A DNA stretch of 63,851 nt, counting the filler, from Octopus bimaculoides (Eukaryota): NCBI RefSeq assembly GCF_001194135.2. It is 7 parts of 6 records of this genome, joined end to end, with 100 filler letters (N's around TTAATTAATTAA, not from the genome) between each part and the next. Parts side by side here need not be neighbours in the genome. Positions count along the whole stretch, not along the records: positions 53,295 to 61,229 come from NC_069005.1; 6 more parts are not named here. One strand, written 5' to 3'. The position numbers and the translations under genes were made by a program. The number at the start of each line of letters is the position of its first letter. Position 1 is the stretch's first letter. The notes below the pieces were generated by a model. That model did no database searches and was not told the origin of the DNA. It saw nothing but the letters and a program-made list of their open reading frames with translations. Positions 53,370-61,041 of the stretch are shown here, piece by piece.

Positions 53370-53858
53370 CAGGGACACCGCTCTAAATCCACGAAAACCG
53401 GTTTTTAACCGGTTTTGAGAATTACTTGTACTTAAACTCGGTTTTGGGAATTATCGGTTTTGTGCGAGCCCTAGACCCTACTGAAGAAGTCATCCTCTAC
53501 CTCTTCGTTGTTGCTGTTCACCTCCACAGATTACTGCCCGATGGCTTCCTCGATCATGCCCTTCATACTTCTCACCTTGGTGAATTTGGTACTATCATAC
53601 ATATCCAACCAGATGAGGTGAAACCTGGGAGTGGAAGGCAGCAGCCAGTTGGCATTCCTCATCGTCCAGGAGGGTCGCAAATCTTTTGTCGATGCCTGCC
53701 AAAACTGCGTCGACCAAGGGGCTGCAGTAGACCAGTTTTGGATAAACGGACTTCAGGTAACGGAAGATAATTAGTCCGATAATGAATATCAAAGTTAAAT
53801 CGTTAACGAAAATGTTAACTTCGTTAATTAATGATTAGCGGACTCACGCCCAGCCCTG
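53370..53858 (-). mobile_element. hAT transposase remnant with CAGGG-type ends
   Basis: Frameshifted peptide YCSPLVDAVLAGIDKRFATLLDDEECQLAAAFH/PRFHLIWLD...EEVEDDFF, resembling the hAT AxxLHPRFKL region; CAGGG...CCCTG ends. Confidence 0.7.
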
Positions 53859-55612: not shown

Positions 55613-56250
55613 ATTCTTTTACTTGTTTCAGCCATTTGACTGTGGCCATGCTGGAGCACTGCCTTTAGTCAAACAAACTGACCCCCAGGACTTATTCTCT
55701 GTAAACATAGTACTTATTCTATCAGTCACCTTGGCCAAACCGCTAAGTTACGGGGGATGTCAACACATCAGCATCAGTTGTCAAATGATGGTGGGGGCAT
55801 GTGACAAACACAGACACACACATATACATGACTGGCTTCTTTCAGTTTCTCTACTAAATCCACTCACAAGGCTTTGGTTGGCCTGAGGCTATAATAGAAG
55901 ACACTTGTCCAGGGTGCCATGCAGTGGGACTGAACCCAGAGTCATTTGGTTGGCAAGCAAGCTACACCTGCACCTTCCATACAATGCAGCTTTTATAACT
56001 GATTTGTTTCAGTCATTAGACTGCGGCCATGCTGGGGCACAGCTTTGAAGAATTTTAGTTGAATGAAATAACCCCAGTACTTATTTTTCTTAAAGCCTTC
56101 TACTTATTCTATCAGTTTCTTTTACCAAACTGCTAAGTTACGAGGATATGAACACAACACTGGTTGTCAAGCAGTTCTGGGGACCAACACTGGCACAAAA
56201 ACACACACACACACACACACACATATAAATAAATAAATATACAACACACA
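55613..56250 (-). mobile_element. Two adjacent SINE family B copies (one full, one 3' half)
   Basis: 55613-55974 and 56003-56250 both begin ttgtttcagtcatt.gactg.ggccatgctgg. Confidence 0.8.
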
Positions 56251-56253
56251 CAC

Positions 56254-56284
<31 letters not shown>

Positions 56285-56584
56285 NNNNNNNNNNNNNNNN
56301 NNNNNNNNNNNNNNNNNNNNNNNNNNNNNNNNNNNNNNNNNNNNNNNNNNNNNNNNNNNNNNNNNNNNNNNNNNNNNNNNNNNNNNNNNNNNNNNNNNNN
56401 NNNNNNNNNNNNNNNNNNNNNNNNNNNNNNNNNNNNNNNNNATGAACACAACACTGGTTGTCAAGCAGTTCTGGGGACCAACACTGGCACAAAAACACAC
56501 ACACACACACACACACATATAAATAAATAAATATACAACACACACACGTATATATATATATATATAAATATAAATATAAATATA

Positions 56585-56818
56585 AATATATATTGATAGA
56601 AAAGGTAAGACAACAAAAAAAAAAAAGAAAAAAGAAAGAAAGAGACCTCGATATTATGTAAATAGAGGAATTTATCTGTAAATAATATGTGACAATTATT
56701 CGGTAGCCATGATAAAACTCCAAGTTTCGGATGTCAGGGCAGAAACCCATGCCGCCATCTCTTCAGTTACCTGGCCATCGAGAAAATGCATACCAAATAA
56801 TTGTCACATATTATTTAC
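56585..56818 (-). mobile_element. Probable Penelope-like non-autonomous fragment (hammerhead plus inverted terminal duplication)
   Basis: 28-bp inverted repeat, 56678-56705 versus 56791-56818 (one mismatch), brackets the hammerhead. Confidence 0.5.
56704..56777 (-). ncRNA. Type I hammerhead ribozyme motif (complete core)
   Basis: Minus strand reads UGGCCA-GGUAA CUGAAGA GAUGGC-GGCA[UGGGUUUC]UGCC-CU-GACAUC-C GAAA CU[UGG]AG-U U UUAUC-A-UGGCUA. Helix I is 11 bp with one bulge, helix III is 3 bp, the cleavage triplet is GUU, and the predicted cut is between 56716 and 56715. Confidence 0.75.
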
Positions 56819-56847
56819 TGATATATATATATATATATAAATATATA

Positions 56848-56996
56848 TAGGTTTCTTTCAGTTTCCGTCTATCAACTCCACTTACAAGGTCTTGGTTGGA
56901 TCAAGGCTACAGCAGAAGACACTTGCCCAAGATGCCACACAGTGGGACTGATCCCAGAACCATGTGGCTTGGAAGAGAGTTTCTTACCATAGAGCA
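56848..56996 (-). mobile_element. SINE family B 5' half
   Basis: ggtttctttcagtttccgtct...gaagacacttgcccaag...gtgggactga. Confidence 0.75.
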
Positions 56997-58268
56997 ACAC
57001 ATGTAGTACACACATTCTATTGTCACAGGCCAATAGAAAGAGGTTGTGAGAAACTAATTTGCATGTTATTAGCATGTTACATCAACAGCTTGTGAGGCAA
57101 AAATTTAATCTGTGCAGTTGGGGTTAAAATTGTAGAGTATGAGTTAAAGGAGATTTCACTGCTATTTCAGGCAGGCTGAGTAGCCATGTGGAGGAGGCCA
57201 CAATGGTCATTTCTGCATGTTTGTTTGAGTGTGTGTATATATGTTAAGCTGCCAAAGTGTACATTTGTCTGCTTATGCTTGTGTGTGTGTGTGTTATTTC
57301 TTTACTACCCACAAGGGGCTACACACAGNNNNNNNNNNNNNNNNNNNNNNNNNNNNNNNNNNNNNNNNNNNNNNNNNNNNNNNNNNNNNNNNNNNNNNNN
57401 NNNNNNNNNNNNNNNNNNNNNNNNNNNNNNNNNNNNNNNNNNNNNNNNNNNNNNNNNNNNNNNNNNNNNNNNNNNNNNNNNNNNNNNNNNNNNNNNNNNN
57501 NNNNNNNNNNNNNNNNNNNNNNNNNNNNNNNNNNNNNNNNNNNNNNNNNNNNNNNNNNNNNNNNNNNNNNNNNNNNNNNNNNNNNNNNNNNNNNNNNNNN
57601 NNNNNNNNNNNNNNNNNNNNNNNNNNNNNNNNNNNNNNNNNNNNNNNNNNNNNNNNNNNNNNNNNNNNNNNNNNNNNNNNNNNNNNNNNNNNNNNNNNNN
57701 NNNNNNNNNNNNNNNNNNNNNNNNNNNNNNNNNNNNNNNNNNNNNNNNNNNNNNNNNNNNNNNNNNNNNNNNNNNNNNNNNNNNNNNNNNNNNNNNNNNN
57801 NNNNNNNNNNNNNNNNNNNNNNNNNNNNNNNNNNNNNNNNNNNNNNNNNNNNNNNNNNNNNNNNNNNNNNNNNNNNNNNNNNNNNNNNNNNNNNNNNNNN
57901 NNNNNNNNNNNNNNNNNNNNNNNNNNNNNNNNNNNNNNNNNNNNNNNNNNNNNNNNNNNNNNNNNNNNNNNNNNNNNNNNNNNNNNNNNNNNNNNNNNNN
58001 NNNNNNNNNNNNNNNNNNNNNNNNNNNNNNNNNNNNNNNNNNNNNNNNNNNNNNNNNNNNNNNNNNNNNNNNNNNNNNNNNNNNNNNNNNNNNNNNNNNN
58101 NNNNNNNNNNNNNNNNNNNNNNNNNNAGAGAGAGAGAGAGAGAGAGAGAAATATTAAAATATCATGTCAAATAAGTCAGCACTGAATCAGCAGTGCAAAA
58201 TCAGTGGTGGTGCCAGATTAGCAGGGTCAAAAGGTCTCATACCCATCTGTTCATGTGATCCCAAGCGG

Positions 58269-58485
58269 TCATGAGTTCATGTTGAACTCTCGATTCAGCA
58301 GTTCTAGGTCAAATTTATCACAGGCATCGTGTAAATCCATTCGGTTCATTATAGTTAGTGTCATGCGTAGGGTCCCCCAGATGTTCATGGACATCACCTG
58401 TCTGGAGGTGTTCATAGAGGCAGGCATCAAATCCTCCGACTTACGTTGCATGTTCAGCGCCACCAAGAAGTGTTCAATGGCTGAT
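58269..58485 (-). CDS. PEX5: PEX5 terminal coding exon including TGA stop
   Basis: Acceptor gttttgcag|A. Phase fits the previous exon (CA+A = Gln). Translates SAIEHFLVALNMQRKSEDLMPASMNTSRQVMSMNIWGTLRMTLTIMNRMDLHDACDKFDLELLNREFNMNS*, similar to the human PEX5 C-terminus EAVEHFLEALNMQRK...MSENIWSTLRLAL. Confidence 0.95.
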
Positions 58486-58742: not shown

Positions 58743-58795
<53 letters not shown>

Positions 58796-58896
58796 TGTAT
58801 GTATAAATATATTCACACAAAAATACATACATACATAANNNNNNNNNNACACACATGTATGTATAAATATATTCACACAAAAATACATACATACAT

Positions 58897-59212
58897 AAAG
58901 ACCCCCTTTGGTTGTGAATGTCCCCTCCAAGACACAAGTACGGGCAAGGTTGTTTTTTATGAAAGACTAGCAGTCACCCATGCATACCAATCTCCCCTCT
59001 ACATGGCACTGATGCTATCCAAGGGTAAGGTAAAGGCCAATACAGCTTGGAACCAGTGACATCATAACTCATTTCTACAGCTGAGTGAACTGGAGCAATG
59101 TGAAGTAAAGTATTTTGCTCAAGAACACAGCACACAGCCTAGTCTGGGAATTGAACTTGCTATCTCATGATTCTGAGCCCAATGCTCTAACCACTGACCC
59201 ATGTGCCTCCAC
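58897..59212 (-). mobile_element. SINE family D copy in PEX5 last intron
   Basis: Reverse complement aligns to 38372-38708. Confidence 0.85.
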
Positions 59213-59288
59213 CTCATATACATATATACACACACACACGTATTATATATATGTGTGTATACATATATAAGCATGTGTGTGTGTTAGT

Positions 59289-59501
59289 GAAGGCCAATGG
59301 CTCAGTGGTTAGAGTGTTGAACTTACGATTGTGAGGTTGTGAGTTTGATTCCCGGACCGGGCTGCGTGTTGTGCTCTTGAGCAAGACACTTTATTTCATG
59401 TTGCTTCAGTTCACTCAGCTTTAGAAATGAGTTGCGACGTCACAGGTGCCAAGCTGTATCCGCCTTTGCCTTTTCCCTTGGATAACATCGGTGGCACGGA
59501 G
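59289..59501 (+). mobile_element. SINE family D copy in PEX5 last intron (cut by gap)
   Basis: Aligns to 38372-38585. Confidence 0.85.
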
Positions 59502-59889: not shown

Positions 59890-60081
59890 ACATGTACATA
59901 TATACAGAGAAGTAAACAACTAAAAAATAAAATATAATATAAAAGAAACAAGACTGTTTCATCATGTGTCTTAGTTTCTGAAATACCAAAAAGAAAAAAG
60001 AAAAAAGAAAAGTGAAAGAGATACAAGACAAAGTAGAGTAGACAGAAGAACAGATATGTTGAATACACAAAATATACTTAC

Positions 60082-60239
60082 TGGTGCACACCGAGATTGA
60101 TGCAGGCTATACCCAGGTTGTAACGGGAGCGGATGAAGCCAGGGGATAGCTGAAGTGCATGATGGTAAGCTTCTACAGCCTGTTCGCTCTTGTTGCTGTT
60201 TGCAAGAGATGCTCCGAGTTTATTCCACAGCTGGGCATC
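60082..60239 (-). CDS. PEX5: PEX5 penultimate coding exon (TPR repeats of the PTS1 receptor)
   Basis: Acceptor ttcttttctag|GAT and donor CA|gtaagt; 158 nt. Translates [52 protein letters not shown], matching the PEX5 motif LWNKLGATLAN...[16 protein letters not shown]. Not in the ORF track. Confidence 0.95.
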
Positions 60240-60775: not shown

Positions 60776-60875
60776 TTAAAAAACAATTATCACCATAATC
60801 ATCATCACCACCACAACCATCATCACTATCATTATCACCATCACCATCATTATCAGACACACACATACATATATA

Positions 60876-61041
60876 TACGACGGGTTTCTTTCAGTTTCCG
60901 TCTACCAAATCCATTCACAAGGCTTTGGGTCGGCCCGAGGCTATAGTAAAAGACACTTGCCCAAGGTGTCACACAGTGGGACTGAACCCAGAATCAAGTG
61001 GCTCTTAACCAAGCTACTTACCACACAGCCACTACTACGCC

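What the first reader, a model, noticed from the sequence alone, without database searches (positions are those of the whole stretch)
56704..56777. Complete hammerhead ribozyme on the PEX5 strand, about 1.5 kb past the stop codon
Seen: all core boxes (CUGAAGA, GAAA, GUU) with an 11-bp helix I, a long helix II and a 3-bp helix III, on the same strand as PEX5. Established: hammerheads occur in Penelope-like elements, and a 3' UTR hammerhead lowers expression of rodent Clec2 mRNAs. Inference: if the PEX5 3' UTR or readthrough reaches here, self-cleavage could set a 3' end or destabilise the transcript. Caveats: about 800 N lie between, a variant ATTAAA signal sits upstream (57104-57109, minus), and helix II has an extra C next to the core.
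Basis: partly seen in the sequence, partly recalled or inferred. Interest (0 to 1): 0.75.

Follow-up and report, generated by a model that had tools for sequence, protein, structure and literature searches.

The report
Transposon-borne hammerhead motif downstream of PEX5
A real but imperfect hammerhead self-cleaving RNA motif lies 1.5 kb past the PEX5 stop codon, inside a small mobile-element insertion, so it is most likely an ordinary transposon relic, not a PEX5 control device.

Summary
The motif is at the stated coordinates on the minus strand (56777-56704). It has CUGAAGA, GAAA and GUU in type I order, an 11-bp helix I, a 31-nt helix II and a 3-bp helix III. It shares a strand with two confirmed PEX5 exons. 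Chance does not explain it: a relaxed descriptor found only this site in the piece, and found nothing with helix I of 4 bp or more in 40 Mb of random sequence.

This element interrupts the (TA)n tract of a SINE.

The motif is imperfect:
- An extra C separates helix II from G12.
- Helix III alone is unstable (+1.4 kcal/mol).
- No partner copy lies nearby.
- No Rfam hammerhead model matches, even at E up to 10.
- A model built from four validated animal hammerheads gives 5 bits.

Best reading: a solo, decaying type I hammerhead left by a Penelope-like or retrozyme-type insertion. A MITE-type DNA element is the main rival.

Whether PEX5 transcripts reach it cannot be tested here. No other copy or orthologous locus was reachable. 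This is a new member of a known kind, of low interest.

The parts
56676..56820 (-). Whole inverted-repeat-bounded element (145 bp) that carries the hammerhead motif
   Evidence: It folds as a long hairpin on both strands (z = -7.1 and -6.8). Its terminal repeat occurs only here in the piece. Repeat pair I2. It interrupts a SINE.
56791..56820 (-). 5' arm of the terminal inverted repeat, CAGTAAATAATATGTGACAATTATTTGGTA
   Evidence: 28 of 30 positions are complementary to the 3' arm.
56778..56790 (-). 13-nt spacer UGCAUUUUCUCGA, present only on the 5' side, between the repeat arm and helix I
56767..56777 (-). Helix I, 5' strand (UGGCCAGGUAA)
   Evidence: 11 bp with 56704-56715; A 56710 is bulged after the fifth pair from the core.
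56760..56766 (-). Core box C3-A9, CUGAAGA
   Evidence: My covariance model aligns it to the CUGAUGA of validated hammerheads.
56729..56759 (-). Helix II (31 nt): GAUG/CAUC 4 bp, an internal loop, about 6 more bp, and a UUCU loop. The extra unpaired C is 56729, next to G12.
   Evidence: The hammerhead-compatible fold is -14.6 to -15.0 kcal/mol.
56725..56728 (-). Core box G12 A13 A14 A15.1 (GAAA)
56717..56725 (-). Helix III: A-U, C-G, U-A closed by the UGG triloop
   Evidence: It is worth +1.4 kcal/mol on its own. The competing hairpin AAACU/AGUUU would sequester A13, A14 and U17.
56716..56716 (-). U17. The predicted self-cleavage site is 3' of this base (GUU triplet).
   Evidence: Inference from hammerhead numbering; not tested.
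56704..56715 (-). Helix I, 3' strand (UUAUCAUGGCUA)
56676..56705 (-). 3' arm of the terminal inverted repeat, TACCGAATAATTGTCACATATTATTTACAG
56821..56849 (.). (TA)n tract of the host SINE, directly abutting the element. This is the insertion target.
56600..56675 (-). About 75 nt of non-SINE sequence, including a T-rich run, between the element and the resumed SINE microsatellite. It may be a tail of the same insertion or a separate one.
   Evidence: Origin unresolved.
56850..57010 (-). Head of the SINE that was interrupted. Two other copies lie at about 55850-55957 and 60902-61009. The SINE tail resumes at about 56442-56560.
   Evidence: (family D5)
58269..58485 (-). Last PEX5 exon, with stop TGA at 58271-58269
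60081..60230 (-). Penultimate PEX5 exon (TPR repeat). Boundaries are approximate.
57104..57109 (-). ATTAAA, the only canonical or near-canonical poly(A) hexamer visible between the stop codon and the motif

Best explanation
The motif is a genuine descendant of a type I hammerhead ribozyme that arrived as cargo of a small mobile element. The most likely source is a heavily 5'-truncated Penelope-like-element or retrozyme-type copy. In that case its last 30 nt were also laid down in inverted orientation at the 5' side, as happens in PLE integration, and the insertion went into the (TA)n tract of a SINE in the 3' flank of PEX5.

It is a solo copy and appears to be decaying. One extra C sits at the helix II/G12 junction, the two repeat arms differ at 2 of 30 positions, and helix III is marginal. 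If the region is transcribed, the RNA could in principle cleave after U17 (56716). Expected activity as a monomer is low. The 11-bp helix I plus the 30-bp repeat stem would also hold the two products together.

It probably has no dedicated role in PEX5 expression.

Shown: the motif, its non-randomness, the inverted repeats, insertion into the SINE microsatellite, solo status within the piece, and the PEX5 strand and distance. Inferred: the PLE/retrozyme origin, low activity, and lack of function.
For: The motif is present and unique in the piece and is not expected by chance.

The element is bounded by 30-bp inverted repeats and forms a hairpin with z about -7.

Aligning three SINE copies shows that the element interrupts the SINE's internal (TA)n/(TG)n region.

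Literature:
- Animal type I hammerheads reside in PLE pseudo-LTRs and in non-LTR retrozymes. Most occur as single motifs from truncated PLEs, have a longer helix II, and carry an unpaired nucleotide beside stem II (PMC4209133).
- PLE hammerheads lie near the 3' end. Insertions are 5'-truncated, often with an adjacent inverted 5'-truncated copy that creates inverted repeats, sometimes with a 30-40-bp tail, and (TA)n is a listed preferred target (PMC8557442).
- Solo retrozyme monomers exist.

Helix I has 5 bp before a bulge and helix II has 4 bp before an internal loop. This matches the roughly 6/4-bp geometry of canonical animal type I hammerheads.

Signs of weakness or decay:
- The extra C at 56729.
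- Helix III at +1.4 kcal/mol.
- The hammerhead-compatible fold at -15 against an MFE of -21.2 kcal/mol.
- No second motif for dimer cleavage.
- No Rfam match.
- 5.1 bits with a model of four validated animal hammerheads.
Against: - No PLE reverse transcriptase or GIY-YIG remnant, or any other TE protein domain, was found in the ORFs scanned from the piece.
- No second copy of the element could be found anywhere, so family membership, the consensus and covariation are all untested.
- The unpaired nucleotide lies on the 3' side of stem II, whereas PLE hammerheads have it between A9 and G10.1.
- Loop 3 is not palindromic.
- About 75 nt of unexplained sequence follows the 3' repeat arm, so the repeat is not clearly the terminus of the insertion.
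- Inverted repeats starting CAG with possible TA flanks fit a cut-and-paste MITE equally well.
- Secondary-structure energies are a poor guide: validated animal hammerheads are also not the MFE fold.
Confidence: 0.6

Rival explanations
1. The 145-bp unit is a miniature inverted-repeat DNA transposon, of Tc1/mariner or hAT type, that happens to carry a hammerhead in its interior. Helix I would then be the inner continuation of the transposon's inverted repeat.
For: The 30-bp terminal inverted repeats begin CAG/CTG. If the ends are taken one base further out, the unit is flanked by TA on both sides. The inverted symmetry continues into helix I after a 13-nt one-sided insertion. cmscan's only weak hits to the unit include MITE-derived plant miRNA hairpin models, MIR812 and MIR6217. 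No retroelement protein domain is nearby.
Against: The TA flanks carry no information inside a (TA)n tract. From my knowledge and the papers read, hammerheads in animals are tied to PLEs and retrozymes, not to DNA transposons. A MITE origin leaves the hammerhead itself unexplained. No second copy is available to show TIR conservation.
Confidence: 0.2
2. The hammerhead is functional in cis for PEX5. The 3' UTR or read-through transcripts include it, and self-cleavage sets an alternative 3' end or destabilises the mRNA, as in rodent Clec2 genes.
For: It is on the same strand as PEX5, 1.5 kb past the stop. Only one weak poly(A) hexamer is visible upstream of it. The core is complete. Co-transcriptional folding could allow cleavage before the 3' repeat arm is made (inference).
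Against: It lies in a TE insertion within a SINE. It has an extra C at the core junction, an unstable helix III and no dimer partner. It fails the Rfam models. After cleavage, the long helix I plus repeat stem, about 41 bp, would keep the products paired and favour religation (inference). There is no conservation or transcript evidence. 798 N hide possible poly(A) sites.
Confidence: 0.06
3. Chance resemblance: a palindromic AT-rich repeat whose loop happens to contain CUGANGA and GAAA.
For: No covariance model recognises it. The 74-nt fold has z = -0.8. Helix I comes for free from the palindrome.
Against: Even without helix I, the core plus helices II and III occurs at 9.5e-7 per nt in random sequence. 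Here it also fits exactly between the two strands of the stem. There were no hits with helix I of 4 bp or more in 40 Mb. G10.1-C11.1 and the 5/4-bp spacing to unpaired bases also match natural hammerheads.
Confidence: 0.02

Closest known systems
Minimal or variant type I hammerheads in the pseudo-LTRs of Penelope-like elements (Cervera & de la Pena 2014, PMC4209133; Craig et al. 2021, PMC8557442)
   Same: Type I topology and a G10.1-C11.1 pair. Helix II is longer than usual, and one unpaired nucleotide sits beside stem II. These motifs are mostly found as single copies from truncated elements. Their insertions go into (TA)n with inverted partial copies, and monomer activity is low.
   Different: Here the unpaired base is between C11.1 and G12, not between A9 and G10.1. 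Helix III is a real 3-bp stem with a non-palindromic triloop. Helix I is long (11 bp). No PLE ORF or second pLTR is in the piece.
Canonical type I hammerheads of metazoan non-LTR retrozymes (coral, mussel, axolotl; Cervera & de la Pena 2020, PMC7229834)
   Same: The same core and order of helices. Helix I has about 5-6 bp and helix II has 4 bp before unpaired nucleotides. Helix III is short. The host sequence is AT-rich and highly self-paired.
   Different: Retrozymes are tandem repeats of 150-450 bp with a hammerhead in each unit; this is a single 145-bp unit with inverted, not direct, repeats. Helix II is 31 nt here against 13-14 nt. Loop 3 is not palindromic. A model built from four validated retrozyme hammerheads scores it at only 5.1 bits.
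Discontinuous hammerhead in the 3' UTR of rodent Clec2 genes (Martick et al. 2008; from my own knowledge, cited in PMC4209133)
   Same: A hammerhead on the sense strand, downstream of a stop codon.
   Different: The Clec2 ribozyme is split by a long insertion, is conserved among orthologues, and was shown to cleave and lower expression. Here the motif is contiguous and TE-borne, and it has no evidence of conservation, transcription or cleavage.
Stowaway/Tc1-mariner-type MITEs
   Same: A short AT-rich unit with roughly 30-bp terminal inverted repeats starting CAG. It has possible TA flanks and forms a hairpin when transcribed.
   Different: To my knowledge MITEs are not known to carry hammerheads. 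The target duplication is uninformative inside (TA)n, and the copy number is unknown.

Membership tests
Hammerhead ribozyme (any type) | Conserved core: C3 U4 G5 A6 N7 G8 A9, G12 A13 A14, A15.1-U16.1, H17 | tested here: met
   CUGAAGA at 56766-56760, GAAA at 56728-56725, U16.1 at 56717, U17 at 56716.
Hammerhead ribozyme (any type) | Three helices radiating from the core, here in type I order with helix I open | tested here: met
   Helix I has 11 bp, helix II has 4 + 6 bp, helix III has 3 bp. Helix III alone is +1.4 kcal/mol.
Hammerhead ribozyme (any type) | C11.1 directly followed by G12, with no insertion at the helix II/core junction | tested here: not met
   An extra C at 56729 is either unpaired beside G12 or forces a bulge at 11.2. 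The bulged option costs 3.4 kcal/mol more.
Hammerhead ribozyme (any type) | Match to a curated covariance model (Rfam Hammerhead_1, _3, _II, HH9, HH10) at the gathering score | tested here: not met
   No hammerhead family is listed even at E up to 10, on 7.9 kb or on 221 nt.
Hammerhead ribozyme (any type) | Mg2+-dependent self-cleavage at H17 | not testable with these tools
   Needs in vitro transcription of about 56690-56800.
Metazoan non-LTR retrozyme | Tandem direct repeats of 150-450 bp, each with a type I hammerhead (at least 2 motifs) | tested here: not met
   There is a single motif in the piece and no tandem repeat of the unit. It would count only as a solo monomer.
Metazoan non-LTR retrozyme | Canonical helix I (about 6 bp) and helix II (4 bp) with interacting loops | tested here: inconclusive
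   There are 5 bp before bulged A 56710, and 4 bp before an internal loop. Tertiary contacts cannot be assessed from one sequence.
Metazoan non-LTR retrozyme | Short helix III capped by a palindromic loop, which gives dimer competence | tested here: not met
   CUUGGAG is not palindromic. The four validated examples have CAGUACUG, CGCGCG, CACGUG and CAUG.
Penelope-like element pLTR hammerhead | Lies in a pseudo-LTR next to an RT/GIY-YIG ORF | tested here: not met
   Eleven of the longer ORFs free of N-gap residues gave no protein-domain hit. However, most PLE hammerheads are solo motifs from truncated copies.
Penelope-like element pLTR hammerhead | Unpaired nucleotide between A9 and G10.1 | tested here: not met
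   A9 is followed directly by G10.1. The unpaired C is on the opposite strand of the stem.
Penelope-like element pLTR hammerhead | Enlarged helix II with a G10.1-C11.1 closing pair | tested here: met
   About 10 bp in two segments, with a G-C closing pair.
Penelope-like element pLTR hammerhead | Insertion signature: 5' truncation, an adjacent inverted partial copy, and a microsatellite (TA)n target | tested here: inconclusive
   The 30-nt inverted copy of the 3' end and the (TA)n target are present, but the same features fit a MITE. An extra 75 nt follows the 3' arm.
Tc1/mariner-type MITE | Terminal inverted repeats plus a TA target-site duplication | tested here: inconclusive
   The TIRs match at 28 of 30 positions. 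TA flanks are possible only if the ends are shifted by one base, and they lie in a TA-rich context.
Tc1/mariner-type MITE | Many dispersed copies with conserved ends | not testable with these tools
   No eukaryotic genome collection is on hand. The metagenome scan with the TIR 20-mer gave 5 unrelated hits.
3'-UTR regulatory hammerhead (Clec2-like) | Contained in the mature transcript and conserved at the orthologous locus | not testable with these tools
   There are no transcript data. The closest protein relatives are 59-86% identical exon fragments on unrelated short contigs.

The most novel reading that the evidence does not exclude
The unit is a cut-and-paste (MITE-like) element whose cargo is a hammerhead clamped by a roughly 41-bp stem. 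That would be a vehicle for hammerheads not described so far. Sitting in a long PEX5 3' UTR, it could act as a cleavage/ligation-balanced or dsRNA-forming switch on the mRNA.
Probability: 0.08. Interest if true: 0.6.

Novelty: new member of a known kind. Interest (0 to 1): 0.2.

Why it matters
Hammerhead motifs occur in thousands of copies in many invertebrate genomes, as passengers of Penelope-like elements and retrozymes. One more solo, imperfect copy near a gene changes little. It would matter only in two cases. The first is that the copy is transcribed within PEX5 mRNA and cleaves, which would be a rare case of TE-derived ribozyme control of a peroxisome import receptor. The second is that the inverted-repeat carrier proves to be a DNA-transposon-type vehicle for ribozymes. 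It also gives a practical lesson: Rfam hammerhead models miss variants with a long helix II and a junction bulge, whereas a descriptor search finds them.

Tried and rejected
1. Rfam cmscan at E up to 10 on the whole piece and on 221 nt gave no hammerhead family. It gave only low-complexity miRNA-like hits and MITE-type hairpin models.

2. A covariance model built from four experimentally validated animal type I hammerheads (sequences from PMC7229834) scored the candidate at 5.1 bits, E = 6 in the piece, ranked 7th among noise. The core aligned correctly but helices I and II did not. The model is small and sequence-biased, so I treat this as inconclusive.

3. Search for further copies:
- The TIR 25-mer with up to 3 mismatches finds only the two arms in the window.
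- The TIR 20-mer in JGI metagenomes gave 5 AT-rich chance hits without the element.
- A hammerhead-specific gapped pattern gave 0 hits in viral contigs and 4 chance hits in bacterial coding DNA, none with helices I or III.

4. The orthologous-locus test failed. The last PEX5 exon alone has no relative in the protein collection. The two-exon query gave only 59-86% identical exon fragments. The closest sits on a 972-bp contig with unrelated intron sequence.

5. Thermodynamic argument. The hammerhead-compatible fold is 6 kcal/mol above the MFE. I gave this little weight because the validated coral, mussel and axolotl hammerheads are also not predicted as the MFE.

6. A hAT-like look of the ORF at 53595-53792 has no Pfam support.

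7. ARAGORN does not call the SINE heads as tRNAs.

Full report
**Observation**

On the minus strand the sequence reads:
- 5'-UGGCCAGGUAA (56777-56767)
- CUGAAGA (56766-56760)
- GAUGGCGGCAUGGGUUUCUGCCCUGACAUCC (56759-56729)
- GAAA (56728-56725)
- CUUGGAGU (56724-56717)
- U (56716)
- UUAUCAUGGCUA-3' (56715-56704)

This is the type I hammerhead order. Helix I has 11 bp with A56710 bulged after the fifth pair. The C3-A9 box is followed by helix II, in which GAUG/CAUC closes a longer imperfect stem. Then come G12-A14, helix III (A-U, C-G, U-A with a UGG loop), and the GUU triplet, with cleavage predicted after U56716. One C (56729) is extra between the helix II closing pairs and G12.

**Chance**

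I wrote a deliberately relaxed type I descriptor. It requires:
- CUGANGA.
- A helix II region of up to about 45 nt with at least 3 closing pairs and an optional extra 3' nucleotide.
- GAAA.
- A helix III of at least 3 bp with a 3-12-nt loop.
- UH.
- A helix I with one bulge allowed.

It returns this site and nothing else on either strand of the piece. The site is also the only CUGANGA...GAAA pair within 60 nt in the piece. In 40 Mb of first-order Markov sequence with the piece's composition, the descriptor gave 3 hits with helix I of 3 bp or more, and none with 4 bp or more. Without any helix I requirement the rate is 9.5e-7 per nt.

Helix I could be said to come free from the surrounding palindrome. 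Even so, the rest of the motif would have to fall exactly between the two strands of the stem. The motif is therefore not a chance pattern.

**What the models say**

Rfam 15 lists no hammerhead family at E up to 10, either on the 7.9-kb piece or on a 221-nt window with lax filters.

I built a covariance model from four experimentally validated animal type I hammerheads: one coral, one mussel and two axolotl, with sequences from the supplement of PMC7229834. It aligns the core boxes correctly but scores only 5.1 bits, E about 6 in the piece. The 31-nt helix II, against 13-14 nt in the validated examples, the junction C and a different helix I sequence explain this. So the site is a hammerhead by descriptor and core, but an outlier relative to curated type I consensus models.

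The motif is the centre of a 145-bp unit, 56676-56820. Its first 30 nt (CAGTAAATAATATGTGACAATTATTTGGTA) and last 30 nt are inverted repeats matching at 28 of 30 positions. This repeat sequence occurs only as those two arms. The unit folds into a long hairpin on either strand, with z = -7.1 and -6.8. The 74-nt hammerhead alone is unremarkable, z = -0.8.

The unit abuts a (TA)n tract (56821-56849) that belongs to a SINE whose head lies at about 56850-57010. Aligning the three SINE copies in the piece shows two things:
- The unit, plus about 75 nt of further non-SINE sequence (56600-56675, T-rich), interrupts the SINE's internal (TA)n/(TG)n region.
- The SINE resumes at about 56560-56442.

The hammerhead thus arrived by insertion of a mobile sequence into a microsatellite. 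There is no second hammerhead, no tandem repeat of the unit, and no TE protein domain in the ORFs scanned from the piece.

**Relation to PEX5**

Two PEX5 exons lie on the same strand:
- 58485-58269 matches PDB PEX5 chains at 1e-8 and ends in TGA at 58271-58269.

The motif begins 1,492 nt downstream of the stop, of which 798 nt are N. The only AATAAA/ATTAAA hexamer visible in between is ATTAAA at 57109-57104. Nothing available here shows where PEX5 transcripts end.

**Mechanism: most likely reading**

Animal type I hammerheads are known as cargo of Penelope-like elements and of non-LTR retrozymes.
- In PLEs they lie in the pseudo-LTRs, near the 3' end.
- Most genomic motifs are solo, from truncated PLEs.
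- They often have an enlarged helix II and an unpaired base beside stem II.
- Single motifs cleave poorly and are thought to act as dimers (PMC4209133; PMC7229834).
- PLE insertions are 5'-truncated and often accompanied by an inverted 5'-truncated copy that creates flanking inverted repeats. They sometimes carry a 30-40-bp tail, and (TA)n is a preferred target (PMC8557442).

A 5'-truncated copy of about 115 nt, retaining the hammerhead and the 3' end, together with a 30-nt inverted copy of that 3' end, inserted in (TA)n, reproduces what is seen. I therefore favour a PLE/retrozyme-derived solo relic, at confidence 0.6.

Several features argue for low activity:
- The junction C at 56729.
- The 2 of 30 mismatches between the repeat arms.
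- The +1.4 kcal/mol helix III and the competing AAACU/AGUUU hairpin.
- The absence of a partner copy.

If the RNA did cleave, the 11-bp helix I plus the 30-bp repeat stem would keep the two products paired. This last point is inference.

**Rivals**

- MITE, 0.2. Repeats starting CAG, possible TA flanks, and inverted symmetry that continues into helix I fit a cut-and-paste MITE. The TA flanks carry no information inside (TA)n, and a MITE origin does not explain why a hammerhead is inside.
- Functional 3'-UTR ribozyme for PEX5, 0.06. This is possible only if transcripts reach the site. The TE context and the defects argue against it.
- Pure chance, 0.02.

**Limits**

No eukaryotic genome collection was on hand. 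Scans with the repeat arm and with a hammerhead-specific pattern returned only chance hits: metagenomes, viral contigs, prokaryotic genomes. The protein collection holds no close relative of this PEX5. Copy number, consensus, covariation and the orthologous site could therefore not be examined.

From memory only, the SINE resembles the abundant tRNA-derived SINEs of octopus genomes. I could not verify the organism.

**Verdict**

This is a real but off-consensus type I hammerhead motif carried by a small transposon insertion. It is a new member of a known kind, with no evidence of a role in PEX5 expression. Interest is 0.2.

Noticed in passing
56148-56284 vs 56442-56578; 58789-58838 vs 58849-58898: Sequence on the two sides of N gaps is duplicated: 137 nt at 99% identity across the 157-N gap, and 50 nt at 100% across the 10-N gap. 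These look like assembly or gap-closure artefacts, not biology (families D6 and D2).
   Followed up: no
59027-59212 and 59287-59472: Two SINE-like repeats in inverted orientation lie in the last PEX5 intron, with 186-nt arms that are 78% complementary and 74 nt apart. They produce the top but spurious Rfam hit, MIR7723 at 50.7 bits against a gathering score of 200.
   Followed up: partly
55850-55957, 56868-56975, 60902-61009: Three copies of one SINE family lie in 8 kb, 68-77% identical over 108 nt. Each is followed by a GAAACTGAAAGAA box and a (TA)n/(TG)n microsatellite. ARAGORN calls none of them a tRNA.
   Followed up: partly
56600-56675: About 75 nt of non-SINE sequence, with a T-rich run that is A-rich on the plus strand, lies between the hammerhead element and the resumed SINE microsatellite. 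It could be a tail of the same insertion or an independent one.
   Followed up: partly
60786-60855: An imperfect tandem array of roughly 9-15-nt units rich in ATC/ACC, reading as a His-rich ORF on the plus strand. It is probably a microsatellite and not coding; Pfam finds nothing.
   Followed up: partly
53595-53792 (minus): A 65-aa ORF whose ...LAAAFHSQ... stretch reminded me of hAT transposase C-termini. Pfam gives no hit at E up to 1, so this is unsupported.
   Followed up: yes
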